From NCBI RefSeq assembly GCF_963853765.1, contig NC_088856.1, positions 14,322,001-14,386,000 on the forward strand: 64,000 nucleotides of DNA. Direction: 5' to 3'. The DNA is from Magallana gigas (lineage: Eukaryota). This document shows positions 172 to 57,079 of this stretch, piece after piece (positions within the stretch are counted from its first letter, which is position 1; every line of letters begins with the position of its first letter). Below the pieces are notes generated by a model that was given only the letters and a program-made list of their open reading frames with translations, had not been told where the DNA came from and did not search any database. The position numbers and the translations under genes were made by a program.

Positions 172-1794
172 AGAAGTAAGAAAGTCTGCAAATAAAACAA
201 CCGCCTATCAAGAAGAAAGCAGCAACTATTTCAAAACTACAATTGGATTTGCCATATGTCTTTCTTTCCTCTTTCTCGCTCTAATCATCTTTGTGATTCT
301 AAAAATAATAAAGTTCTTGAAGCAAAAATCAATTTGGTTTCAAAAAGGTACAGTTATATTATATCTTACTTACTAAAGTAATATTTGGACAATATGTGAT
401 CTTTATATGGTGTTTATACATATACTGATTTTAAAAGCTTCAATCATTTTTCTAAAATAGGTTTTTTTTTTAATTTTTAAGGACATAAATCAAAGGAAAA
501 CGCTTTAAACAAAGACGAGGAGTCTGAACTTACAGGCAAAGAAGAAGGAAAATCCAATATACGAAGATTACACGACTTGATTGTCCAGGGTACAAAACAA
601 GGGTTTACTCGTTTGATATGTGATTTCAATAAAGATGATCTGGAACAATTAAACGTACGGGGATTAAACTGCTTACATCTTGCTGCAAAAGGTGGTAATA
701 TTCAATTATTTAAAAGAATTCATAAATGCGGTGTAAGCATTGACACAAAAGCAACTGACGGAAGGAATGTTTTGCACATTGCTGCCCACCACGGGAACTA
801 TGCAATATGCGAGTACCTTTTGCAAAAACATAAGAACCTATACACGGACACTGACAGATATGCAATGAATCCTGCTCACTGGGCTGCACTTGCTGGAGAG
901 AAATCTATATTGGAGCTCTTCATGAAATATGGATGTGATCTAACTGAACTTACTCATCCATATAGAGAAAATATAGTTTTATTTGCCTGTATGGGAAAAA
1001 GTTTAGCTGTTTGCAAGTTTGTGGGATCAAACAAAAACATTTCACACCTTTTGCACGAAAAGAATAGAGAAGGATGGAGCTCTATACAATATGCAGCTAA
1101 AAGTGGAAATCTTGAGGTTTTTAAATATCTTGTTGATGAAGGTGTAGATATTGAAAACAAATCACAGAAAACTGGAAAGAATTGTCTACATACCGCATGT
1201 GAAAAGGGTCATTTGAAAATATGCGAGTATATATTGAAAACGAAACCCGGGCTTTTAACAGAACTAGACAAAAATATGCAACACGTAGGACATTTTGCTG
1301 CAAAAAGCGGGGACGTTGAAATACTGCAGCATTTGTTAGATCATTCCCTCGTCGATAACGCGTTCTTACAGAAACCAGCCACTGATAATATTCATCTACT
1401 GCATATCGCATGCAGGCATGCAAGATTTGATATGTGTCTTAAAATAGTGAAAGAGTTTCCTTTTATGATTCACGAAATCACAGAAAAAGGATGGAATGCT
1501 GCCCTATTTATCACTGAAAGAGCTGGTGCCGAAAACGAACGAATACAAATTTTGAAAACTTTAACTGATATATCATCAGAATCCCCTTTAAATGCGTATC
1601 ATGTTTCACGATCCGGAAAAACTATTTTGTTCAATGCATGCGTAAACCGGTCACCTAAACTGGTTCAATTTTTGTTAGAAAACTTTCCAGACTTACCAGA
1701 AATTGAAAAATCAATGGATCCAATAGAGTCAGCAAACTCAGAGGAGATAAAAGAAATTTTTAAAACACACTATCAAAAAAGTTACAAATGTTAA
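172..1794 (+). CDS. Receptor paralog A (5'-partial): stalk + TM exon and terminal ankyrin-repeat exon of a single-pass TM ankyrin protein
   Basis: Exon 172-347 (tgtacag|...AAAG|gtac, phase 2-1) encodes EVRKSANKTT...IGFAICLSFLFLALIIFVILKIIK. After intron 348-481, exon 482-1794 is in frame with ORF 577-1794 and holds about 10 ANK repeats (GLNCLHLAAKGGN, GRNVLHIAAHHGN, GKNCLHTACEKGH). Same exon phases as paralogs C and D. Ectodomain exons lie upstream of the window. Confidence 0.85.
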
Positions 1795-14400: not shown

Positions 14401-17118
14401 AGGAAATCTACACAACATAGTTATCCATCTTTACGAACAAGCATTTGAAATATTACGTTCGCAGTATGGTAAAGATAAATATGAATCAAAGAACTGAAAG
14501 AACTGAAAAGCGTTAAGCCTGGATAAAACTGTTAAAAATATCCCAAATGTTCTAAAAATATTTGTGAAGAATCATATTTGAATCTTGATTTGTTCGTTAT
14601 TGTAAAAATGCACTCACTCAGAAATCGGATATCACTTAGTACATAGTTAAAGAATACATAAATCTTTGAAATAATTAATGCATGCTGACGTGTTACAATG
14701 AAAACTAAATATAATGCTGATGACTTAAAAAAAATCAGCATCACGGCATTTCATAAAAAATCTATGTGAATCTTTATTTTTGAAGCATAAAATATTTTAT
14801 CTATTTGACTGTAAAGTCAAAATTTCCTTTTTACAATATAAACATGTTTTAAAATATCACGATTGTTTTGAAATTTTAGCAATTTATGGAAATGGAGAAG
14901 TAATAATCTTATAAGAGCATTGCTAGACTAACTGAGTTATTTTATTTTAAACAGATTTTGCTGGTGCACAGATAAACAGTATATGCTTCTTGCAACGAAA
15001 ATAAAGTAAAATAACAAAGCTCAGATGATAATTTAAATTTATTTATGGGGTTTCAGTTTGCTAATTTTCATTTCTTTGTTATTACATCTGATAAATCGTA
15101 AGCAATAAGTGAAGAAAACTTTTTTTTTAAAACTGGCAAATTACGGTAACAAAATAAAAAGCCAAATGTTTTGACAAAGTACGACAATAATAAGATCGTA
15201 TTACAGATATGCCTAGCAGGAAATGCCACTTAGATCTATTCTTCTAAATTTTAGCTTTGGTATTCGAACATCAGGTTCGCCCCTCTGCTCCAAATCTCAT
15301 GAAAAGATGGGCATAAACACCTCCAATATATAAACATTACTGGATGTTGGAATATTATTCGAAACGAAGACGCTTCTCATCAGTTTAAGTATTGGCTAGG
15401 CAGTCTCTTCTGTGGTATATTTTAGGGAATATCGTTGAATTTAATGACGTCTAGCTCATATCTCAACAGACGTGAAGTGTCGTGTTTATAGTAAGTTTTG
15501 TCAAAGGGTGGGGGGGGGGTGTCATTGACGTCTATGTAGGTGTCACAACAGCATTTCACCGTCAAAACATGGCTGAAGCAAAATAATTTCAAATTCTCCT
15601 TTGAATTTGGTGTAATTCCTGCCACGACTGTGACCGTTTTCTTTTATGAGATGAAAAAAATTATAAGATGTCTGACTATTCAAGTTTTGTAATCAAGCGA
15701 GGTCATTTTAATTTTTTTATGCGTAATGTTTTTAAGGGGTGAGAAGGTTTGGGCTTTATTTTCAAGCACATGTATCTTCGACGTAAACAAGTTCTCATGC
15801 CTTGCAAGATGCACCTATGTTTTTGCTGCTAAATTGTAAATGAAATGTTGTTTAAAAATATGTCAAGTAGATTTTTTCCTAGAAATTCGTTTTGAATGTA
15901 TAACTTGTATCTAAAGTAAGCATCATTGCTAAGAATATATAGTAAAATTTAATATTGTTTACATAGTGACACCTGCAATACATACGATCTCTGTCGGAAA
16001 GGCTCAAGATGTTGCGATTGGATGGAAGTACTGTTTTGGCAAGCGTATCAGAATACGTAACCTGAAAAATGACCTGTAGCCTTGTAATAGGGTACGGGTT
16101 CTTTTAGAGAACTCAAACCATTAAAATGGCAAGAAGTTTTATTTTATAAATATCAATATATCGGGTATAGATGCATTGATATTTTTTATTTGTAAATTTG
16201 ATAATTTCATCACATACTACAAAATTTCATTTAAAGATTTGAGATCTTACACTTTGCTTTGAATTATTTACTGTTATTAGATGTTTTATGTATGTATAAT
16301 TTGCCAAACTGAACATATATTAAATCATCAATTATGTTATGTTTGCCCAAGATGAATCGTCCTCTAAGCAATTTTATATGAAGTATCACTTTACAGCTTT
16401 TGTTACATATATCTGCTGTCGTATTTCAAGTAACTTGACAGTTATAAGTTTTGTTAATTATATTCAAATCATTTGTGCTGTTGGATCATAATCAAATTAT
16501 AGAACTCCAAAATATGAAGGAAACATAGTTTTGTTTGCATGTATCGGTGAAAGTATTGAAATTTGTAGGATGTAACAAACATATTGCTTCCCTATTTTAT
16601 GCAACAAATAGTGAAGGATGCAATTCCATTCAATATGCAGCCAAAAGTGGTAACCCCAAAGTATTCAAATATCTTTGTTACAAGGTGTGACTATTCATAA
16701 TATACCAAGGAGTTAAAATCCCACCACTGACGATATTAACATCCTTCACATTGTCTGTAGACACGCAAAGCTGATATATGTGTCAAAATAGCCGACATAT
16801 TTCCTGACCTGATAAACGAAATAACAGAGAGAGAGGATGGAATGCAGCTCTCTTTATCACTGATAAAGCAGGAGCAGAAAGAGAAAGAATTAATATCTTA
16901 CATTTCTTAGAAAAGCGTAAATTGAATGTTTACCATGTAACTAGATCAAGAAAAACTATATTGTAAAATGCATGTGTAAATCGGTCGAGAAAACTTGTGA
17001 AATATTCAGTAAGCCGTTATCCCGATTTATTGAATATATAAAAAAAACAATGGATCCTAGAACAGCAGGCAAATCTCGCGAGATTGAAGAGCTTTTTAAA
17101 CAACATATCGAGACATAA
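11424..17118 (+). pseudogene. Receptor paralog B, pseudogenised (ectodomain and TM exons plus decayed ankyrin exon)
   Basis: Exons 11424-11607, 12956-13066 (111 nt, as in C and D), 13192-13266 (75 nt versus 70 nt in C and D; a 5-bp CTCAA duplication gives a frameshift and TGA) and 13436-13653 (TM: AVVVALAILLGISVSALLITCVFICC). The ANK remnant is at 16490-17118. The signal-peptide exon was not located. Confidence 0.8.
16490..17118 (+). pseudogene. Decayed ankyrin terminal exon of paralog B
   Basis: Fragments TPKYEGNIVLFACIG, NSEGCNSIQYAAKSGNPKVFKYL, DDINILHIVCRHAK, GWNAALFITDKAGAERERINIL and RSRKTIL*NACVNRS align to A, C and D. It has several frameshifts and stops and lacks ANK repeats 1-3 and 6-7. 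Confidence 0.88.
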
Positions 17119-21735: not shown

Positions 21736-24222
21736 TTATTGATGTCCAACTATTTTTTGCCGATACTCATCAAGAAGTGATTTAATTTCAGTTGAATCTG
21801 TGGCAGTTTTAGCATCAATAGATCTTTCGAGACATAACAAATCAGGATAATTTTGTAATAGGTATTCGATTAATTTTGTAGACTGATTTGCACAAGCATT
21901 GTATAGAATGGTTTTTCCTGCTCTTGATGCATGATGAACGTCTAGGCCATGTTTATCAAGAAGTTTCAAAATTTCAATTCGCTTCAACTCGTTTTCAGCT
22001 CTCTCTGTTAAAAATAAAGCAGCATTCCAACCTTTCTCAGTGAGTTCAAGAACCAAATCATGAAGAATATCTAGTTTTTCGAATTCAATACACATGTCAA
22101 GCCTTGCGTATTTGCAGGCAATATGCAGAACGTTGACATTGTCTGAAGTGGCCTTTTTCCATAACGATTTATCTCTGTATTTTAACAATTCTTTAAGGAT
22201 ATTTGTATTACCACTCTTTGCCACAAAGTGACCGACATGTTTGTTATTCTTGTCCTTTTCTTGTATTAGGTCTGGACATTTTTGCAATATATATGCACAT
22301 ACGTCATTGAATCCTTTCTCACAAGCTGTATGTAAACAATTTTTCCCCGTTTTATGGGATTTGTTTTTAATATCAACGCCATTCTCGTAAAGAAACTTGA
22401 CTGCTTCGAGATTTCCATTTTTGGCTGCATACTGAATTGAATTCCAATTTTCTCTGTTTTTGGCGTGAAGTAAAGTAGCTAAATTTTCATTTTTTGCCAC
22501 AAATTTAAACACATCTAAACCCGTGTTCATACACGCAAACAATACAATGTTTTCTTCGTATTTACGAGTTTTATATGCTAAATCACAGCCATGGTTTGAC
22601 ATTAGTTCCAGAATGTTTACATGTCCGGCAAGGGCGGCCCAGTGTGCAGGATACATTTGGTTATTGTCTGTTTTCTCATACAATTCTTTCCTCTCAGTCA
22701 AAATGTACTCGCAAATATCATGATTCCCGTAATATGAGGCAATGTGCAGAATGTTGCGCCCATCTGTTGTCGTGGATGAGATATCATTACAAGCTTCATA
22801 AGTTGTCTTAAACGCATCCAAATTGCCCTCTTTAGCGGCAATATGTAAGGGATTAAATCCTCTACGGCCTAATTGTTTCCTTGCAGTTTCAACGGATGAT
22901 TGCTGTCTTCCTTCCATGATTCTTCGTCGAATGGCTGATATCGGATTCAATTCACTATGTCGACTACTTCGTGTCCTTGCTGCAGAAAATGATAACATAC
23001 TTCATTGCATTTATAAGTGTGTTCAAAATATAAGACGATATTTTACAAACAAACGAAATGGTCATTAGCCTTTACTGTCTACTGAAAAGAATAGTACTAT
23101 GTAAAAACATGGAACAATGCAAATATTTAAAGATGATTACAATTTCATTCATTATCTAAAGATAATTTTAAAGATATCTTAGCTTTATCTTATATCAAAG
23201 GTATCTTTAGAGGTCATACATTATTCAAAGCAACATCTATAATTAGTCAGCGGACAAGGATAAAAAAATAGGTGAGTTGCTAGCTAGATATGAAACGATG
23301 TTTGAATGTAGGTCATGCATTTCAAGAATTTATCGTATCAAATCTTATTTCGTGTTTTACTATGATGACAATATGGTCAGCATAACCCAGTACTAGCAAA
23401 TCATACCTGAATACCAAATCTTTTATTTATTTATTTTTTAACATTATCATATGCTTGCCTTTGAAGAAGTGGGAGATCAAGTATCGGTCGAGGTATACAC
23501 GTGTTAGTATTTAGTCAACATAAGAGTTTGTAAAGTTTGTAAGCCTTTAAGGAACATGATTACGAATTCGGTCAATTTTGTCTGTTTTTAATTTTACAGT
23601 GCTTCAATAAGGCATTCCTAATATTCAACCATAATTGAGTATCAGTCGTCAAGTTATAAGAGAGATACGAGCTCAATATTCTTTACTACGTAAATAAGCT
23701 CAGGTAGTGTTTTTGTCGACATTTTAAATGTTGCAAAGAAATTGCCAGGTTTAAACTGAAAATGAATGTTACAAACTCTAGGATCTGTTTTTTCATGTTC
23801 AAAACGAATTAGCAGATAGAAAAATCAGATTGAAAAAGTACTTTTACAAGAATTTATATAGACAAAAACATAACACGAGCCTTGTCTACATGACAAAGAA
23901 TTGCGAGTTCTTTACTTACATATAACTCTACGACTGACACTCAAACTTTGCTTGTTTGTTAGAAATGCATTACTGAAGCAGTGTAAACAATACAAATAGA
24001 AAAATAAAATTTGACTTAAATCGTTGGCCTTAACTGTTCTACTCACTCAGTGGTATATTTCCATCATTATAGGAATCTGATTCAGAAGACAACGTTTTAA
24101 CTTGTGGATCTTCAGAAGACGCAGGTGAATATTGAACAATGGGCTTACATGGCAGAGATTTGTGGTCTGCAAATAATACGTACATATTGTGAAATTCAAA
24201 AGAGGTATTTGAAGAAAAATAC

Positions 24223-46432: not shown

Positions 46433-49400
46433 ATGGATTGTAGTCAATATTACATCACTATTTGCCTGGTAATTTTATCCACACTGACTTCGTCGGTAAG
46501 CAATAAATGATACACGGAGATGGTTAGAGAAAACTAAAAAAAAAACCGTGTACTTTAAAATTATGTATCTGTATATATTTGATCAAAGGACTATCAATTG
46601 ATGATGAATATGCAGATTGTGTGTTTATTAAATTTTGCAAAACCTATCAAGAATTTAAACTAACCTGCAGAAAGTCCACATCTAGAGCATATTAACTTGA
46701 AAGACTTCTCTGTTACGTTCTGCGTCAGAAACCTTATTCCAAAATCGACTCCCTTTCCAGTTTCCAGTTAACTGAACGTGCTTTCATTTGTATCTCTTTA
46801 TTTTGTCTATAAAGGAATAAATAAATAGATAAGTCTGCTTTGGTTACTTTACTGCCAGTGTGTAAAACTTTATTGTAGATCAATTTGCGTATTTGTTAAG
46901 TAAAAATCCCATTTCTTGCTTTGCTTTTTGTATGTTCATTATTCATAATTAACTATAAAGCAGAAAGGCATTCTCCAACTAAATCAATTATGGTGCGTAT
47001 AAACATGAAGCGTAATTTTAGAGTATAACATTTTTGTATGAATGATTTAAAACAGATATGTGTATAATTTAGAGATTAGTGAAAATATTTCTGAAACACG
47101 TTATGTATCTGTAAATACTTATCATACAATGCATTAATCCTGATTTTTTCTCAGAAAATATCATTCTTTGTAGATGTCCGAGTACGCATTCCAAATATTT
47201 TCAGTTAAACATTGTCCTAGTAGTGAAGAAGGTTGGGGAATGGCATCCTCTCGATTAGGATGTAACAGTACACATGGATATCAGTGTGTTCCTAATAAAC
47301 ATCTGACTTCTCTCATTGAGTTTTGTTACCCAAGGGGTGTCAATATCCTGTTTGAAAAAGGTTTGAAACATTCATTTTAATATGACCTTTAAATTTGTTG
47401 AATGGGATTGGTTAAATTAAAAAAAAATTATAAGCTAGTAGGACAGCATTTTAAGCCCATTCTATCAATTTCGATCCGTTTAATTTCAAATGGTTTTTTG
47501 AACTCAGGTTTTCTATATCGTTGAGGTTAATTTGAAAACATAACCATAATATGTTTTTGACATAATCAATTTCAGCTACAAAAAAGTGCATACCAAATTG
47601 CAATGTTCAGTAATATACTGCTAACATTAGATTATGTCACAAAAACGTTAACGAAATACTATCATATATATAGTATACTTGATAATATTGTTAGGATGTC
47701 GAAAGCACGTGGAACTAAATATTGTTCTGAATAAAATATAGATTGTTTTATATTTATTTTAAATTTGTATCATAGTGACGTAAAATCAAAAATCAAGCAA
47801 TTGATCCAGTCAAATTAACAATGACATTCACTAGTTCACCAAATCTTACATAATCTGCAAAATCGTTCTCTAACTGAAAAAGGTATCACTGACCAAAGGT
47901 AATAGAAAGGCCGTGTGAGAGAATTGTCTGGTAAATAGATAAGAAACCGAGATATATATATATAATGTATATACATTTACTTCAGATAAATAAAAAAAAA
48001 ATCTTATCAAAAAATTCGAAATACCTAGTTTGAAAGAACTATATATGATAAGACTTAAAGTTTGCCCCCATAATTCGCCATTTTTTTAAGTGTTTCGGGT
48101 ACAATAAAATGTTAACTAATTTTTTAGAAGAGTTGATATAAAATATATTTTTCATCTATTTATTTGATTTATTTGCACTCGCTGGCAGTATATGACGTCA
48201 GAAGTGACGCCATTTCTATAATTCAATCAATATTAGCCCAAAATTGACATTTTTCTTATCTATTTACGAATGGGAAATATAGAGCGCATGCTTAAACAAG
48301 GAAATTTTTTGGTCACTAATAGTCTTGGCTAGATACATCTCTGATTAAAATATTTTATTTGTTCAAGAATGCGCTCTATGTTTTCGGAAAGGAAAAACTG
48401 CTCGAAAACAAGCTGTTTACGCTAAAAATGCAAAAATGGCGGGAAAAGGTTGTCTTTACAATGGCATATTTACAAATTGTGGGCACTTGAATCAAAGTGA
48501 ATATTATGTAAACACATCACATACATATCTGTACTAAGAAAACAAAGAATGATAGTAAAATGATGTATTCATCTTAGGGGGCCATTTTAGGCCCTTATCA
48601 TATATAGTCCTTTAAAGTGAACATTTTGGGTTATAGATGACAGTGTAAAAAAAACATGTCTCCCAGAAACGGCATCATTTTATGAATTTGAACACCACCC
48701 TTTTTATTCGACATCAGTAATAGGGTTGTGTTGTATGCCTGTTCACCGTTATTATATTATTTGTCTTTATGAAGGGAATTGCCTAGAATTGGCTGATGAT
48801 GGAATTCTAAATCATGTTCCTTGCAACAAAATGTTTGAGTTCGGGTGTCCAGACAAATTTTATTTAAGCAACGAAATATATAAATGTAAGCAATTTTGTT
48901 TTGGTATAACTTTTCAAAGTTAATCTCACGATTTTTGCCATGTTTTTTGTTACTTTTTTGGCACTATTGGACGTGATGTGTTTCATAACATATTTAACAA
49001 TCCTTCAAAGTATGCCAGTTTATTTTTAATGGAAGTTAAAACGGCAGAAAAATAAAAAATAAATTATTTGTAAATATTTGATGCAGACTAGATAATAATC
49101 TAATTATCATATTTTTATATCAAATCTATTTCCTTCGTTTCTAGATCCAAGTTGCCTTGCAATTAATACAACGCTGAAATGTTTTTATGCCGACTTCAAT
49201 TGCATTTACTCCAAGTTAGTGTATTTCTCATTACTCGGCAAATTGTGTTTCTACGATTATATAGGAGCTCTCATGATTTGCGATGGTATATGATTTTTAA
49301 CACACAACCAGTTGGATAAAAATCATATACCATCGCAAATCATGAGAGATTCTTTTAATCGCATGCTTAACCACAAGTTAAACCTCAATCTTTTGTTAAA

Positions 49401-52400
49401 CCTCAATTTTTCTGTAAACATAATTGTGAGCATGGAAAAAAGTTCCTTGAAGATTAGCAAACAAACATTTCATTTTGTGGTATATTTTTATCAATTTATA
49501 AAAAAAAAACACCTGAACCAGCTCTAAATGCTGCACATTTATAACTCTACGCTTTTCAATTGAATTATTTTGTTACTTTTTCAATCTACGTCAATAGTCT
49601 GCATAAAGCTACTTAATGTTAAATTATGACGTCATGTGGCGTTAGAACACATAGTGGAATATCAAAAATTTATCCCATGAGTAATATCCACCGTATATTG
49701 AGATAAACATGTGATAATGGACAATATCTTGCAAAAAGTAAACATTTATCCGATGATAAAAAACATGACCAATTTAATGTCTGATAACATTATTAACGTG
49801 AATACAAAATTGATTCTTAGAGTGAATGCATGCAGCAATTCTAATTTCTGGAGAGTCAGACGGAGAGTTAATATGTTTTCATTTTAAAATAGAATATTTT
49901 GAGCAAATATGTTTCATTAAAAATAATATTAAAAACTCTATTTTTTATAAATCATATTTTTTTGGTTCTTCTTGACCAGATCTATGATAAACCAAACCAG
50001 ATATATATTAAACCAAACTAGAGTTATGATAAACGAAACATGCGAAGAAAGCCTTATTTGTGGAATGAAAAATAGCCTCCTCAACTCGTGCAATGTTACG
50101 GCTATTGTGATGGCTGTGATATTTGGTATAATTTCTTTGATACTGGCCGTTTTGCTAGTGGTATTCATCAAGAGAAGAAACGTTACAATCAAAAGAAAAA
50201 AAGGTAAAGACGTGTATTTACATTTTGTGTTTGCTTTAACTAAATTCAATAGTGTCATATTATCATCGTTTCTGTAGTTTATCTTTATGAAAAGCAATAG
50301 GGCAATGTACGAATCGCCTTCTGTCATAGTAGTATTATATATAACATATACCATATTCATATTATCTTTTATTAATGTTTAGGCTTACAAGATTTGGAAA
50401 ACGGTATGTACGTAATTCATTTCGTTCAACATCATTATGCTATAATTACATTTAGTGTATAATTCCCCTTCTGTTTACAGGGAAATCTGTGACGTTCATT
50501 TTTAATAGCTCACCAGCCCTGATCAGGGAGTATGAGTATAAGTAAACATTATCAGGCTTTTGAATACATTTATTATTGTACTGAGATCATATGAACCGTT
50601 CAAAGTTATGCAACCAATTTGATATGAACTTATAAAAATGGTAGATGAATCATATCTATTCGTTAATAAAACAAAAATATACTTCTCGACAAAGTCTATG
50701 GTATTTTTTTTAGCAGCGGAAACAAACTAAATAACATGTAAATACACGTATGCCTGTTCCATCTTTTATTCATATCCCTGCAAAAAAGAGTATATAATGG
50801 CTTTAAAGCGATACAAAAATATGTCATGCAATTAAAAACATCAATATAAAAATGAATATTAATCTTTCGAAAGTATTTTTTTAAAATTCCTTCATTCTAA
50901 TTTAAGTCTTGATAGTCACTGTCAAGAACTAAAGTGTTTTTAAGGTGGTACGGGGCATCTCTTTATATTCATGTTTGAATTTGAATTAAAGTACATTATA
51001 ATCAAAATACTCTCAGCAGTTTAAATTTAAAATTTTACAATATTTAACCAAAAATGAGTTTTAAATGTTTAATGTTTTGGAAAAGTAAAACTTTAAAAAT
51101 CCCCAGCAAGAACTCATGACTTACAGATTCGAAGTGAACCCTCTAACCCACTGGTTTTCGCTGTTAGGTGACAATTTATGGAAAGAAACTATAAAATGAC
51201 ATTTAATTTGCAATTGATTGTTTGTTTTGATAATTAGAACGTCACAACTTAGAGGTGGCCCATACTAACTTAACACCATCGTTTCAAGTAATCATTATGC
51301 ATGTTTTGGTTTTTTAATCACAGATGAGTAAAAGTAATTGCATGTTTTGTTAGAAGCATTAATCCTCCACAACACGATGCATTTTAGTGAAAATTTATGT
51401 TTCTTCATATTCGCGTAAAGTATTAAGGATTAAGAAAAACAAGAGATGTTTTTAAAACACGTATGCCCCCTTATGAAAATGCTATGGAAACATCTGCGAA
51501 GAACATGAACGGAAACTGCAAATAATGGAAACTTTCGAATTCCATGGGGCATAACTGTGTCAAAAAATGCTTTATTGTTCCCCAAAAAGCTGGATTGTAT
51601 TTAAAATTAAACTTGACCTAGATATCATTATGATAAAACTGTATACAAAATTCCATTCCAATATGTGCATCCTCTGAAAAGAAAATGAACGGAAACTGCA
51701 AATTATCTGAATTTTTCTACGTCCAAGGGGCTTAACTCTGTCGAAAATTGCTCAATCGTACCCATTACTGCCTGACGGGTCAAATACAGTACAGAGGTTA
51801 AGCAAACCGATGTGTACACGTGAGAACACTAAGTCATCAGTTTTTGTAACGGCGAATTTCGAGTAGCGTTGACAAAAAGGACTGTATTACGTAAATGAAA
51901 TAACCTTCAATGTTTACTGGAGTTGGTATAGTTTGTTCGTATACCCAGTCTGTTCTCAATGACTAGCACATCTTTATTACACAGTTAGTGTGCAGTAAAT
52001 GCCAATATGACTGTATTAAGAAACTATCCTCACAAGCAATGTGTTTATTTTTATGTCTATTTTTGTAGGAGAAAGCCATCCTCTTCAAGAAGTGAGATTT
52101 GAACAATCGGAGATAACTATTGAACCAAACGAAGAAAGAAATGGTAACAGAGCAGTTAAAAAAAGAAGCTATTCTTCATTTTCAATAATTACAATATAAA
52201 TATTACCAAAAGATTTGATGCTAAAACCACATGCATATATATTCTCATTGCTGTGGACTCATTAAAAATCGTAGGGGCGAATTTTCATGGTTTGTATAAA
52301 ATTCACAGGTTCGAGGTTCGATAATTTCGTGTATCCTCTTATACGTACAAAAGGAAATATGACTTTAAATCCTGATTTATTAATTTGCGGTGGATGTATA

Positions 52401-54595
52401 TTCAAGGATGAGGGATACCAACGAATTCCACGAAAATTGAGCCACCACAAAATCTATTGATTTTACAGTATACCTCTGTATTTTTCTATGTAAAATTATA
52501 ACGAATGTACCTACATTTCATTCATCAATGTACTATTTCATCTAGATAGCCTTTACCGTTAAAGTGTTCGTTCTATTTGCCCAGGGTTAATAGTCATCGT
52601 AACTATTTACCAGCAACATTCGATTTCCCTTGCTTTTATGTCGGAACCCCAATCAAGATATCACAGTCGCTACCTCTAAACTCTTACTTGTTCACCATAA
52701 AAAAAACTCAGCATCACCGATAAATAATTTTTTTGTTAAAAACGAATACTTATACATGTATACTTGCATTGAAGACATAAGCCAATAAATTCTCCTGCTC
52801 GATAGCAACTACTTCCCTAGCCTCGGCTTTGCCTTTGGAAACAGCGACAATACATAAATTTTATATGTCAAACAAACATCAATATGAATATAAATATTAG
52901 GTAATAGTTGCTGTTAAGGGGGTAAACTTCCTATTGCTAGTAAATGGGGAGATAATATAAATTTTATCTCTTGCAGACAATGTACATGCGTTGCCTCCGC
53001 AACATATTAGTCAACCTCAAAACGCTGCGGATCAATTACCAATATCTTTAGTTGCAGGTGATTTTTGAACATTTCAATATATGATACATAAATTTAAAGG
53101 GCCCCTCTGAATTAATGGATAAAAGTTTACAAAGCATTTCAGAGAATTTTGCTTTGACTTTGACCTGTAACTTAGAAATTTTTCTAACTGGCATAAAACT
53201 TTAAGTCCAATCTCATTACCCGTTACATTATATAACGCATGTTTTGTTCCTCTGAGCAAGATTAAGCAAATGGGATTGACTTGGTTCAAAGTCACTGCAC
53301 ACACTTTACAGAAAAGCTCTACTTATGTGAAGTATGAGCCAAGTTAGGCTATGTGAAGTATACATAACATATTCAATATCATTGCCTACCCTTTGGCCAA
53401 ATTAAGGCACCCTGTGGTTGAAGTATGAACCAAATTCGACCAAGGAGAAAGAAGATACGCTACGGATAAGGATTTTTCTTACCATTCTGATATGACTTCA
53501 CATTTTACCTTGAAACTTGATTTAAGGTCACTGCACACCCTTTACCCAAAGGCACTCTGTGGGTGAAGTATGCGCCAATATGGGTCAAAGGGAGAGCAGA
53601 TATGCTCCGGACAAGAGATCTCAGTCGGACAGACAGACGGACGGACGGTTGGACGGACCGATAAACATCACTTTAGGTCGCCAGCAGGGTGGGGCTTTAA
53701 TAATTCGACCTAAAAGGACACTAGTATATCAAAATACGCCGGTAAAGTTAGACAGCTGGTCAATGATAAATACCATGAAAAATTTGAAGAGAGAATAATT
53801 CAATGTCGAGATGTTTTGTATATACCATAGTTTTTACATTTTGTTTTAAAATTGCAAAATGTTGACAATGTTTTGTTATTACATTAACATCCGAACAATG
53901 ATTTGTAAAGGATGGGATGTTTGGGTTTTTTTTAGACGAAATGCGTCTTATCCAAGTAGCGAATTTTAAGTTATGCTGAAACAGCGTTGTAAATTAATAT
54001 CAGTAATGCAGTAAAATAACCTCTAATGTTTACATGATTTGGTATTCTTTGTTCGTATACCCAGGTCTGTTTTCAATGACTTGCACTATAAGCGTGCAGA
54101 TACGACTGTGTGACTGTATTAAGAAAAATTAACATCACAAAAAAATGTGTTAAATATGTTTATTTAAGCAGGAGAAAGCCATCCTCTTCAAGAAATGAAT
54201 TCTGAACACATGGAAATATCTACTGTGTCAAACAAAGAAAGAGATGGTAAAAGAGCAGTTTAAATAAGTAGCTATTTTTCAATTTCGTAAATTCCAATGT
54301 TAANNNNNNNNNNNNNNNNNNNNNNNNNNNNNNNNNNNNNNNNNNNNNNNNNNNNNNNNNNNNNNNNNNNNNNNNNNNNNNNNNNNNNNNNNNNNNNNNN
54401 NNNNNNNNNNNNNNNNNNNNNNNNNNNNNNNNNNNTAAGCGCTTTCATTTTCATCTTCAGATGTTTTCAACTAACCTAGTTGTAAAACATCTGAAGATGA
54501 AAATGAAAGCGCTTATGTTTTACTCGGACTTTGTGTTTTTATTCATTTAAGTTTTCTATATTTTATCCGATCACTGTAACTTTTTCCTGGATTTA

Positions 54596-54681
<86 letters not shown>

Positions 54682-55037
54682 TAAGCACAAACATTGCAAT
54701 AACTCTCAAATTGACATATACCTGCCCATAGTGAATGATACTGACATATATATAAAGCACAGGGAAATATATATATATATATTACTGAGTATACCTCTGT
54801 ATTTTTATGTAATATTACGATGAATAAACTTTGCTATTTCATCTAGATAGCCTTCACCGTTAAAAATTGTTCGTTCTATTTGCCCAGGGTTAATAGTCAT
54901 CGTAACTATTTACCAGCAACATTCGATTTACCTTGCTTTTATGTCGGAACTCCTATCAAGATATCAAAGTTGCTACCTCTAAACTGTTACTTGTTTACCA
55001 TTAATAAAAACTCAGCATCGCCGATAAATAAAGGTGT

Positions 55038-55069
<32 letters not shown>

Positions 55070-56413
55070 AAAACAAAATACTTATTTACTTGCATTGAGG
55101 ACATTAGAAAATGTATTGTCCCCCTCGATAGCAACTTTTTCCCTTTGGAAACAGTTGCTGTAGATGGGGTAAACTTTTTATTGCTAGTGAATGGGTGGAT
55201 AATATATATTTTATTTCTTGCAGACATTGTATTGCCTCCGCAGCATATCAGCCAACCTCAAAACTCGCATCAATTACGAACATCTATAGTTACTGGTGAT
55301 TTTCCAACGTTTCAATATTTGATACATAAATTCGATAAGCATTCACTTGAAGAAGTTGATTCCAATGGGTTCAATTGTTTACATTCCGCTGCAAAAGGCG
55401 GTAATTTGAGCATTTTCAAAAGGATATGCAATATGGGAGTTTCCGTTGAGAAAAAAACAAACGATGGATCAAATATCTTGCACATTGCGGCACAACACGG
55501 ATGTTACCCAATTTGTGAATATATTTTAGAAAACTATGCAGCTTTGTTTTCTCTAAAAGACAACCTTGGTATGAATCCTGCACACTATGCAGCAAATGCT
55601 GGTCAATATCATATTCTTGATCTCATGTTGAAACAAGGTTGTGATTTATTTGCCGAAGATGAGAAAAATAACGAAAATATAGTTCATTTGGCGTGTATGG
55701 TAGGAAGCTTGGAAGTGTGCCAATTTGTAAAGGCTAACAAAAATCTGGAGAAACTACTGCATGCTAAAAACGGCGGAGGTTGGAATTCTATTCAGTATGC
55801 GACAAAAAATGGACATCTTGATATAGTGAAATTTCTTCTCGAGAATGGCGTTGATGTTAAAAACAAATCCAAAAAAATCGGCAAAAATTGTCTTCACACA
55901 GCATGTGAGTTTGGCAAACATGAAATATGCGAGTATATCATAAGTAAAGCACCAAACCTTATAACCGATACCGACTCTAGCGGACAACATGCGGGACATT
56001 ACGCAGCAAAGAATGGACATACTGATATACTACAGCTGTTGATAAACGTCGATAAATATGCCATGCAAAGACCATCTCATGACAAAATAAATATCCTCCA
56101 TGTCGCGTGCGAAAATGCACATTATGATATGGTTGTGAAAATTGCCAAGGTTTTTCCGTTTATGGTAAAGGAAATTACAGAGAAAGGTTGGAATGCAGCA
56201 CTTTTCATCACCGATAAAGCTGATGCAGAAGAAGAAAGAATCAAGATATTGAAACATCTCCTTGATCACGGCCTTGATGTATATCGTGTATCAAAGTCAG
56301 GAAAAACTATTCTCGTGAATGCACGCAAAAACAACTTAAAAGATATTGAACAGTACTTGTCACAACAGTTTCCGAACTTAATAGGTTTAAGGAGACAAAT
56401 TTCATTTCAATAA
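46433..56413 (+). CDS. Receptor paralog D, complete: signal peptide - Cys-rich ectodomain - stalk - TM - micro-exon linker - about 10 ankyrin repeats (about 671-698 aa)
   Basis: Exons 46433-46495 (MDCSQYYITICLVILSTLTSS), 47174-47360, 48775-48885, 49145-49214, 49980-50203 (TM AIVMAVIFGIISLILAVLLVVFI), 50383-50403, 52069-52143, optional 52977-53057, 54172-54246 and 55224-56413. All GT-AG with compatible phases; exons 2-4 have the same lengths as in C (187/111/70). Confidence 0.85.
48034..48611. mobile_element. TTAA-type MITE in intron 2 of D
   Basis: Left AAGAACTATATATGATAAGAC..AAAGTTTGCCCC; right GGGGCCATTTTAGGCCCTTATCATATATAGTCCT|ttaa. Confidence 0.65.
50944..51269. mobile_element. TTAA-flanked MITE with internal tRNA-like segment
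   Basis: ttaa|GGTGGTACGGGGCATCTC ... GAGGTGGCCCATACTAAC|ttaa. The core at about 51105-51160 (GAACTCATGACTTACAGATTCGAAGTGAACCCTCTAACCCACTG) resembles a reverse-strand tRNA. Confidence 0.6.
52251..52470. mobile_element. Tc1/mariner-type MITE
   Basis: CTGTGGACTCATTAAAAATCGT...TTTTCATGG ... CCACGAAAATTGAGCC...TTTTACAG|ta. Similar to the 19565 element and absent from the duplicated downstream intron copy. Confidence 0.55.
53095..53705 (+). mobile_element. Helentron/HINE-like element truncating the duplicated ankyrin-exon copy
   Basis: TTTAAGGTCACTGCACACCC...GTGAAGTATGAGCCA repeats, GACA/GACG microsatellite and a terminal GGTCGCC.GCAG.G.GGGGC..TAATAA motif. A related element lies at about 51440-51770. 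Confidence 0.6.
54304..54435. other. Assembly gap (132 N)
   Basis: Run of N. Confidence 1.
54436..54515. repeat. Near-perfect 80-bp palindrome (fold-back element) abutting the gap
   Basis: TAAGCGCTTTCATTTTCATCTTCAGATGTTTT-CAACTA acc TAGTTG-TAAAACATCTGAAGATGAAAATGAAAGCGCTTA. Confidence 0.9.
54598..54677. repeat. (TA)n microsatellite
   Basis: Direct reading. Others: (GA)n about 25531-25564, (TTG)n about 55036-55068, (GA)n about 57751-57796. Confidence 0.95.
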
Positions 56414-57079
56414 AAAGTAGTTTGAATATACATGTATATTTACACACACCCCTTACTATCATACTTATGTCCTTATTTGATCATACTGTTTATTTTTTAT
56501 TAGATTTTGACGTCCCTATTGTCTAAATTTCAATAAATAGATGTCGTAGTTTTAGCCACTTCTTTAGCAAAATGATGTGGTTTGTTTTGTTAAAATATGA
56601 TCAAATAGTCTTTTAAATCTCACAAATTAAGTAAAACTTCTTCTAAAAGAAGTAAAATAATAAGCACTATAAATTATTGCTGTGTTTCAAACTTTTTTAA
56701 AGGAAGGACTTTGGAATAGTTAAAAAATTACTTTGTTGGTTCAAAATTGATAAACCTATCGAATTGTCACTAGATGGAATTTCAAAACTTTTCAAATGAT
56801 GGAGAGATATCGTTATTAAAATTAAGAAGTAGAACTTTTCGGGTCTTGTTAATCAGTGCTGCAAGTGAAATGTTATCTACAATGTAACTGTCATTTCCCG
56901 ATACACATGTTTGTTGCAATATTTTCATCAACGAATTATCATGAAACATTATTTGTTTTTGTTTAATCAGTGGTAGACCCATTGATTTTGATACAATCTA
57001 CTAATGAGAACGTCCTTGTTGATTACATGTAACCAACTGAAATATGCTCATATTATATATCATAATATGATCATTATAA

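What the first reader, a model, noticed from the sequence alone, without database searches (positions are those of the whole stretch)
51850..55330. Intragenic duplication in paralog D creates a stop-containing copy of the ankyrin exon start, a candidate decoy switch
Seen: about 51850-53095 duplicates about 53955-55330 (75-nt GESHPLQE exon, intron and the start of the ANK exon). In the upstream copy (acceptor 52977) CCA is replaced by TGA at 53066-53068 and the rest is cut off by a Helentron-like insertion. The copy also has a GCAG|GTGATT donor at 53057/58 that makes an in-frame 81-nt cassette. Inference: three outcomes are possible, namely skipping (full receptor), cassette inclusion (longer linker) or terminal use (membrane receptor with no ANK domain, a decoy or dominant negative).
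Basis: partly seen in the sequence, partly recalled or inferred. Interest (0 to 1): 0.72.

Follow-up and report, generated by a model that had tools for sequence, protein, structure and literature searches.

The report
Duplicated exons give alternative receptor linkers
An old 1.2-kb duplication inside a Pacific-oyster membrane-ankyrin gene made two optional in-frame mini-exons that NCBI already annotates as isoforms; all of them keep the ankyrin domain, and nothing supports a truncated decoy form.

Summary
Window 51898-53094 and 54014-55332 are diverged direct copies, 80-88% identical at aligned positions. The upstream copy has a 75-nt exon, acceptor 52977, TGA at 53066-68 and CAG|GTGATT at 53057/58.

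The gene is Crassostrea (Magallana) gigas LOC117682385: a ten-cysteine ectodomain, a TM segment, a linker and an ankyrin domain. Eight RefSeq isoform proteins rebuild exactly from the window.
- All contain the upstream 75-nt exon.
- After it comes nothing, or the 81-nt cassette 52977-53057 spliced straight to the ankyrin exon at 55224, or the downstream 75/78-nt exon.
- So cassette inclusion and skipping are already annotated, though the cassette joins 55224, not 54172.

The decoy outcome has no support:
- no truncated protein was found;
- there is no AATAAA or ATTAAA in the 1.1 kb after the stop;
- the cassette changes at the neutral rate between C. gigas and C. angulata;
- C. angulata carries CAT|GT at the donor and has no annotated cassette isoform.

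The duplication is not an assembly artefact, because C. angulata has the same layout. The N gap lies in an intron.

The repeat at 53095-~53714 fits a Cg_HINE Helentron derivative. It probably predates the upstream copy rather than cutting it.

No RNA reads could be examined. This is an ordinary case of exon duplication plus exonization. Interest is low.

The parts
46433..46495 (+). Coding exon 1 of LOC117682385 (start codon, signal peptide)
   Evidence: Exact rebuild of RefSeq isoforms from the window
47174..49214 (+). Three ectodomain exons (47174-47360, 48775-48885, 49145-49214). Exon 48775-48885 is skipped in isoform P0120.
   Evidence: No Pfam hit for these exons.
49980..50203 (+). Exon with the transmembrane segment and the KRRNVTIKRKK stop-transfer stretch; ends in phase 1
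50383..50403 (+). Optional 21-nt micro-exon (LQDLEN), phase 1-1
   Evidence: Present in P0118, P0121, P0124 and P0123; absent in P0122, P0001 and P0119
51898..53094 (+). Upstream copy of the duplicated unit
   Evidence: Three collinear BLASTN blocks against 54014-55332; 80-88% identity
52069..52143 (+). 75-nt linker exon, upstream copy (GESHPLQEVRFEQSEITIEPNEERN); present in every isoform
   Evidence: The spliced Logan contig L009 joins 52143 to 55224.
52977..53057 (+). 81-nt alternative cassette, made from the duplicated 5' end of the ankyrin exon. Acceptor TTGCAG|AC, donor CAG|GTGATT. It encodes NVHALPPQHISQPQNAADQLPISLVA, and the split codon at each end gives D.
   Evidence: Five RefSeq isoforms contain it, spliced 52143>52977 and 53057>55224
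53066..53068 (+). TGA in the copy's frame, 9 nt beyond the cassette donor, so intronic in all annotated isoforms. Related oysters have CGA at this codon of the ankyrin exon.
53095..53714 (-). Dispersed repeat of Cg_HINE (non-autonomous Helentron) type in minus orientation: (CGGA)8 at 53626-53658 (GTCC on the minus strand), a 9-nt inverted pair at 53672-80/53706-14, and internal direct repeats
   Evidence: Element structure as described in PMC7492417.
53715..54013 (.). Single-copy spacer between the repeat and the downstream unit; no similarity to neighbouring DNA
54014..55332 (+). Downstream copy of the unit, continuous with the full ankyrin exon; includes the intronic N gap 54304-54435
54169..54246 (+). 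Optional 78/75-nt linker exon, downstream copy ((A)GESHPLQEMNSEHMEISTVSNKERD), with tandem acceptors AAG|CAG| at 54169 and 54172
   Evidence: Isoforms P0121 and P0001 (78 nt) and P0124 (75 nt); also C. angulata P0133 and P0132
55224..56413 (+). Last coding exon: end of the linker plus the whole ankyrin-repeat domain and the stop codon; 3' UTR reaches at least 56588
   Evidence: Pfam Ank_2 E 5.7e-45

Best explanation
The gene is oyster gene LOC117682385. It encodes a ten-cysteine ectodomain, one transmembrane helix, a cytoplasmic linker and an ankyrin-repeat domain.

A ~1.2-kb piece holding the 75-nt linker exon, the following intron and the first ~110 nt of the last (ankyrin) exon was copied once. 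The copy lies upstream, directly against the end of a Helentron-derived repeat that (inferred) was already in the intron.

Both the linker exon and the copied exon start are phase 1-1, which had two consequences.
1. The gene now has two homologous 75-nt exons. The upstream one kept the ancestral-like sequence and is in every model. The downstream one diverged and is optional.
2. The copied start of the last exon brought its acceptor and an internal CAG|GTGAT. In a last exon that site has no acceptor downstream and is harmless. Placed upstream of real acceptors it works as a 5' splice site, giving an 81-nt in-frame cassette that is spliced straight to the ankyrin exon.

The TGA sits 9 nt past that donor and is removed with the intron. 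The outcome is a set of isoforms that differ only in the length and sequence of the juxtamembrane linker (plus 0, 25/26 or 27 residues). All of them have the complete ankyrin domain.

Shown: the duplication, the coordinates, that the annotated isoforms are exactly encoded here, one real spliced contig for the skipped form, and the same layout in C. angulata.
Inferred: the order of events, the latent-donor mechanism, and that the cassette is near-neutral splicing variation rather than a regulated switch.
For: Duplication and its details.

Gene identity and isoforms:
- The ankyrin exon is 100% identical to XP_034305641 and its cluster of 10 named LOC117682385 isoforms.
- The same isoform X1 sequence carries accessions from two NCBI annotation releases, XP_034305637 and XP_065937466.
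- The isoform alignment shows three alternatives after the upstream 75-nt exon.
- Eight isoforms are rebuilt exactly from the window with GT-AG introns.

Other support:
- Splice-site contexts are good for all these exons.
- Logan contig L009 from run SRR8856663 joins 52143 to 55224.
- The C. angulata locus L010 is collinear at 96.5% through the upstream copy, the repeat and the downstream copy.
- Related-oyster contigs have GCAG|GTGATT and CGA inside the ankyrin exon, so the donor-like site is ancestral and the stop is one CpG transition away.
- In L014 the exon next to the ankyrin exon encodes a peptide resembling the upstream copy.
Against: - I saw no RNA reads.
- Only the skipped form has a real assembled transcript contig here.
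- Relative abundance and tissue or stress regulation are unknown.
- Distances among the copies and the L014 unit are mixed: L014 is closer to the upstream copy in the 5' part and to the downstream copy in the 3' part. The timing of the duplication is therefore not resolved, and gene conversion is possible.
- L011 could be a paralogous locus or a secondary deletion.
Confidence: 0.78

Rival explanations
1. Decoy switch. Acceptor 52977 is used without the 53057 donor, the transcript ends by polyadenylation inside the repeat, and a membrane receptor lacking the ankyrin domain is made that titrates ligand or acts as a dominant negative.
For: The acceptor at 52977 is as good as the real one at 55224. 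An in-frame TGA follows 90 nt later. Truncated decoy receptors made by intronic polyadenylation are an established mechanism in animals (general knowledge).
Against: - No ~280-aa product among the named members of the cluster.
- No 152-485-aa protein carrying these peptides. This is a weak negative, because 90% clustering hides members.
- No AATAAA or ATTAAA in 53060-54170.
- A strong donor lies 9 nt before the stop and is the one used in five models.
- Any transcript retaining the TGA but spliced further downstream would be a target for nonsense-mediated decay.
- The three C. gigas/C. angulata differences in the 81 nt are two amino-acid changes and one change at donor position -1, which is the neutral rate.
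Confidence: 0.06
2. The cassette is not used in vivo. The five RefSeq models containing it are prediction artefacts, chosen because the copy is in frame, has consensus sites and resembles the start of the ankyrin exon. Biologically the upstream ankyrin fragment is a dead pseudo-exon that is always skipped.
For: - The only real spliced contig seen (L009) skips it.
- The Ensembl/UniRef model P0008 skips it.
- C. angulata has no cassette isoform.
- The cassette evolves neutrally.
Against: - The cassette isoforms were predicted again in a second NCBI release on another assembly (two accessions for P0118, P0122 and P0120).
- To my knowledge NCBI reports alternative Gnomon variants only with transcript or RNA-seq support.
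- The cassette's splice sites are among the best in the gene.
- C. angulata's lack of the isoform is matched by a G-to-T change at donor position -1, as expected if the site works in C. gigas.
Confidence: 0.14
3. Assembly artefact: the two copies are haplotypes or a collapsed or expanded repeat stitched in tandem around the N gap.
For: An N gap and a palindrome (54436-54515) lie inside the downstream copy.
Against: - The copies differ at 12-20% of aligned positions and by many indels, far more than haplotypes do.
- The independent C. angulata assembly has the same order at 96.5% identity.
- Identical isoform proteins containing both copies come from two C. gigas annotation releases.
- The gap lies in an intron, well away from the copy boundaries.
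Confidence: 0.02

Closest known systems
Tandem exon duplication giving alternatively spliced homologous exons (general phenomenon described by Kondrashov & Koonin and by Letunic, Copley & Bork; recalled from memory, not read here)
   Same: Two adjacent homologous exons of the same length (75 nt) and phase (1-1), one present in every model and one optional. Post-duplication divergence is concentrated in one copy.
   Different: The exons are not strictly mutually exclusive, since both 75-nt exons occur together in isoforms P0121, P0124 and P0001. The duplicated unit also carried part of the next exon, which became a third, unrelated cassette.
Exonization of a duplicated exon fragment through a latent 5' splice site
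   Same: A sequence that was internal coding sequence (GCAG|GTGATT inside the last exon, seen in related oysters) acts as a donor once an acceptor lies downstream of it. The new exon is symmetrical and in frame.
   Different: The source is the gene's own terminal exon rather than a transposable element such as Alu, so the new exon repeats the following protein segment (PPQHISQPQN occurs twice in tandem in isoform X1).
Cg_HINE, non-autonomous Helentrons of C. gigas (PMC7492417)
   Same: Over a thousand dispersed copies, internal direct repeats, a short GTCC-type microsatellite next to a subterminal inverted pair, and an intronic location.
   Different: I had no Cg_HINE consensus sequences to align. 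I did not identify the 3' subterminal repeat and palindrome. The conserved segment at the presumed 3' side is about 180 nt, not about 60 nt.
Soluble or truncated decoy receptor isoforms made by intronic polyadenylation (e.g. sFlt-1; general knowledge)
   Same: A premature stop in an alternative exon upstream of the signalling domain would give a receptor without its cytoplasmic module.
   Different: There is no poly(A) signal, no annotated product and no sequence constraint here. A strong donor precedes the stop.

Membership tests
Tandemly duplicated alternative exons | Adjacent exons homologous in sequence, with equal length and phase | tested here: met
   52069-52143 against 54172-54246: 60 of 75 nt identical, the first 23 nt identical, both phase 1-1
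Tandemly duplicated alternative exons | Alternative use in transcripts | tested here: met
   RefSeq isoforms with and without 54169/54172-54246 in C. gigas and C. angulata. This is model-level evidence only, apart from contig L009.
Tandemly duplicated alternative exons | Strict mutual exclusion of the homologous exons | tested here: not met
   P0121, P0124 and P0001 contain both 75-nt exons. The 81-nt cassette and the downstream 75-nt exon never occur together in the models, but that is based on only 10 models.
Exonized duplicate of a terminal-exon start | The cassette is homologous to the 5' end of the downstream exon and bounded by AG and GT | tested here: met
   52897-53094 against 55144-55332, 81-86% identical; acceptor and donor contexts
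Exonized duplicate of a terminal-exon start | Junction reads in RNA | not testable with these tools
Cg_HINE / non-autonomous Helentron | High-copy dispersed element | tested here: met
   1,247 first-look candidates and 127 scored matches on many chromosomes, with matches starting at query position 1-3 and ending near 610
Cg_HINE / non-autonomous Helentron | Left flank with subterminal repeat, complementary IR and a GTCY/GTCC microsatellite; central tandem repeats | tested here: met
   (CGGA)8 at 53626-53658, which reads GTCC on the minus strand; 9-nt perfect inverted pair 53672-80/53706-14; internal direct repeats 53279-53342/53515-53578 and 53371-53470/53520-53615. Criteria taken from PMC7492417.
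Cg_HINE / non-autonomous Helentron | Right flank with 3' subterminal repeat and palindrome; insertion at TT without target duplication | tested here: inconclusive
   No convincing 3' subterminal repeat or palindrome near 53095-53160. The flank reads AAATT|T-AAAGGG. No empty site was available.
Truncated decoy receptor isoform | A transcript or protein ending in the stop-bearing exon | tested here: not met
   None among the cluster's named members; none at 152-485 aa; no canonical poly(A) signal. RNA 3' ends were not examined.
Oyster ten-cysteine ectodomain / TM / ankyrin receptor-like family | Cysteine-rich ectodomain with the HGYxCVPN core, a single TM segment and a C-terminal ankyrin domain | tested here: met
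   Isoform sequences; Ank families only by Pfam; dozens of oyster relatives with the same layout
Alpha-latrotoxin / latrocrustotoxin (the name given by RefSeq) | Latrotoxin N-terminal wing and body domains in front of the ankyrin repeats | tested here: not met
   Only ankyrin-repeat Pfam families hit, and the upstream exons have no Pfam hit. The protein is a type-I membrane protein with a short ectodomain. The name reflects ankyrin similarity only.

The most novel reading that the evidence does not exclude
The 81-nt cassette is a lineage-specific new exon whose use depends on one base. C. gigas has CAG|GT at the donor and annotated cassette isoforms. Its sister C. angulata has CAT|GT and none. 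If inclusion also responds to tissue or immune challenge, this would be a natural, datable example of exon birth from a gene's own terminal exon, with an on/off pair of closely related species. Less likely, the perfectly conserved GESHPLQE start of both 75-nt exons contains a PxQE (TRAF-type) docking motif, and splicing sets its copy number to 1 or 2. That idea has no support in the paralogues' linkers.
Probability: 0.12. Interest if true: 0.45.

Novelty: new member of a known kind. Interest (0 to 1): 0.2.

Why it matters
It matters little beyond annotation. The result explains where three of the alternative linker exons of one oyster receptor-like gene come from. It also shows that the stop codon that looked like a switch is intronic in every annotated isoform.

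It is a clean teaching example of two known routes to alternative splicing acting in one duplication: exon duplication, and activation of a latent donor copied from a terminal exon.

The family is oyster-specific, large, and possibly involved in recognition or immunity. Linker variants could matter for signalling geometry, but nothing here shows that they do.

Tried and rejected
2. Truncated product. A word search with residues 215-277 of isoform X1, length range 152-485 aa, found nothing. Because members of 90% clusters are hidden behind their representative, this is only a weak negative.
3. The look-up of encoding contigs for isoform X1 returned nothing, because records of this genome are left out. 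No Logan contig carrying the cassette could be fetched.
4. The idea that 53707-54013 continues the duplicate or the ankyrin exon was rejected. Local alignment scores equal those of shuffled sequence, and the stretch is single-copy in the genome.
5. The idea of a PxQE/TRAF motif conserved across the family was rejected. Paralogue linkers are unrelated and lack it.
6. A literature search for the locus name gave no paper.
7. Joined (spliced) protein models were not sent to any search tool. Exon joins were only checked inside a script against proteins the tools had returned.
8. The letters under the N gap were not looked up.
Full report
**What is there**

- BLASTN of 51000-53400 against 53400-56500 gives three collinear blocks: 51898-52195/54014-54298, 52452-52818/54771-55144 and 52897-53094/55144-55332. 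Their E values are 6e-54, 3e-83 and 3e-51. The repeat finder shows the same blocks.
- Identity at aligned positions is 82% in the upstream intron part, 80% in the 75-nt exon, 88% in the 3' intron part and 86% in the copied start of the ankyrin exon.
- Within the exon, the first 23 nt are identical and the last 51 nt are 72.5% identical.
- The upstream copy has the 75-nt exon 52069-52143, the acceptor at 52976/52977, TGA at 53066-68 and GCAG|GTGATT at 53057/58. Its homology stops at 53094.

**The N gap**

The gap (54304-54435) begins 58 nt after the donor of exon 54172-54246, inside an intron, so no reading frame depends on it.
- Its two flanks are collinear with the upstream copy.
- They lie in the same order and orientation in the C. 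angulata chromosome record.
- Isoforms that splice across it are reproduced exactly.

**Which gene**

The ankyrin exon (55224-56413) hits only ankyrin-repeat families in Pfam, with Ank_2 at E 5.7e-45. It is 100% identical to XP_034305641 of Crassostrea (Magallana) gigas.

Its 90% cluster holds ten named isoforms of LOC117682385. Several of them carry accessions from two NCBI annotation releases.

RefSeq's names, such as 'alpha-latrocrustotoxin-Lt1a-like' and 'ankyrin repeat protein RF_0381', reflect ankyrin similarity only. The protein has a signal peptide, a cysteine-rich ectodomain with no Pfam hit, one TM helix, a linker and the ankyrin domain. I did not retest that.

**Isoforms**

I aligned the isoforms and rebuilt eight of them exactly from the window using only GT-AG introns. 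The exons are as follows; square brackets mark optional exons.
- 46433-46495
- 47174-47360
- 48775-48885
- 49145-49214
- 49980-50203 (TM)
- [50383-50403]
- 52069-52143
- [52977-53057]
- [54169 or 54172-54246]
- 55224-56413

Every exon from the TM exon onward is phase 1-1, so any combination stays in frame. The upstream 75-nt exon is in all models. After it, three alternatives occur.
- Nothing: P0123, P0119, the Ensembl/UniRef model P0008, and C. angulata P0002.
- The 81-nt cassette, spliced directly to 55224: P0118 (isoform X1), P0122, P0127, P0120 and P0126.
- The downstream 75/78-nt exon: P0121, P0124 and P0001, plus C. angulata P0133 and P0132.

No model has both the cassette and the downstream exon. 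No model ends at the TGA.

The 'nothing' form is also seen in real data. Logan contig L009 from run SRR8856663 joins 52143 to 55224 while retaining the intron upstream of 52069.

Skipping and cassette inclusion are both annotated, so that part of the inference was right. The cassette's partner is 55224 rather than 54172.

The TGA lies 9 nt past the donor used in those models and is therefore intronic. For the third outcome, terminal use giving an ankyrin-less decoy, I found nothing.
- No such protein among the cluster's named members.
- None in a targeted search. This is a weak negative because of clustering.
- No AATAAA or ATTAAA between 53060 and 54170, whereas the real 3' end has two AATAAA within 130 nt of the stop.

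**Comparison with C. angulata**

The orthologous locus L010 (GCA_025612915.2) is collinear with window 49430-54303 in one 96.5% block, and again from 54438 to 56390. The duplication and the repeat are therefore real and older than the split of these two oysters.

Within the 81-nt cassette there are three differences. Two change amino acids and one changes the last exon base, so CAG|GT becomes CAT|GT. Three differences in 81 nt is 3.7%, the same as the regional rate of 3.5%.

By contrast, the downstream 75-nt exon and its flanks have no difference in 106 nt. The TGA is retained in C. angulata. C. angulata has only three annotated isoforms, none with the cassette. This fits a weakened donor, but it could also reflect less RNA data.

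**Origin**

Genomic Logan contigs from more distant oysters (L011, L013, L014) show that the ankyrin exon ancestrally read GTTGCAGGTGATTTTCGA.
- The donor-like CAG|GTGAT was therefore already inside the terminal exon, where no acceptor follows it.
- The codon that is TGA in the copy was CGA, one CpG transition away. The C. gigas functional exon changed it to CCA, and changed GCA to ACT.

In L014 the 75-nt exon next to the ankyrin exon encodes GESHPLQEVNFEQSEMSTEPNEERN. This is closer to the C. gigas upstream copy than to the downstream one. It suggests the upstream copy kept the ancestral sequence and role while the positional original drifted and became optional.

Pairwise distances are mixed between segments, so the timing relative to that species is unresolved.

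**The repeat**

Window 53095-~53714 is a dispersed repeat. The search gave 1,247 first-look candidates, with matches starting at query base 1-3 and ending near base 610.

It contains internal direct repeats, (CGGA)8 at 53626-53658, which reads GTCC on the minus strand, and a 9-nt inverted pair at 53672-80/53706-14. This fits the left-flank, central-repeat plan of Cg_HINE non-autonomous Helentrons (PMC7492417), in minus orientation. I could not confirm the 3' substructures and had no consensus to align.

The next ~300 nt (to 54013) are single-copy and unrelated to neighbouring DNA.

In contig L011 the repeat's first 79 nt are followed by the same unique DNA and then a single unit. The DNA to the left of the repeat is unrelated to the cassette. 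The simplest reading is that the repeat was in the intron first, and that the copy was later laid down exactly against its end. On that reading the copy was never longer and was not 'cut off'. A secondary deletion or a paralogous locus cannot be excluded.

**Verdict**

This is a real, old intragenic duplication. It produced one extra homologous linker exon and one exonized fragment of the terminal exon, and both are already represented in public isoform models.

All known products keep the ankyrin domain. The variation lies in a poorly conserved cytoplasmic linker that differs completely among paralogues. The decoy-switch idea is unsupported.

The main gap is direct RNA evidence.

Noticed in passing
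window 54436-54515: An 80-nt near-perfect palindrome directly abuts the right edge of the N gap. A palindromic match is also seen in the C. angulata locus, so it is probably real foldback DNA and may be why the assembly broke there.
   Followed up: partly
window 48775-48885: Isoform P0120 skips this 111-nt ectodomain exon in frame. That removes 37 residues, including several of the conserved cysteines of the ten-cysteine domain, so the variant probably cannot fold like the others.
   Followed up: no
window 50383-50403: An optional 21-nt micro-exon (LQDLEN) lies between the TM exon and the first 75-nt exon. It is present in about half of the RefSeq isoforms and in all three C. angulata isoforms.
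   Followed up: partly
L010:10560-10680 (C. angulata), equivalent to window 55232-55310: In C. angulata the functional ankyrin exon reads ACAG|GTGATT where C. gigas has ACTG|GTGATT. The donor-like site is therefore stronger in the real exon of C. angulata and weaker in its cassette copy, the reverse of C. gigas.
   Followed up: no
window 556-1716 (+), 21817-22878 (-), 16532-17038 (+): Further paralogues of the ankyrin exon (about 50-52% protein identity, one of them partial) lie in the same window. None shares DNA similarity with the duplicated linker unit.
   Followed up: partly
window 54598-54683 and 55036-55070: Long (TA)n and (GTT)n microsatellites sit in the intron of the downstream copy and are absent from the upstream copy. 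They account for part of the length difference between the copies.
   Followed up: no
L011:245-823: About 580 nt lie between the homologue of window 51297-51453 and the repeat start in a related oyster. They have no clear counterpart in C. gigas, so the intron has been remodelled more than once.
   Followed up: no
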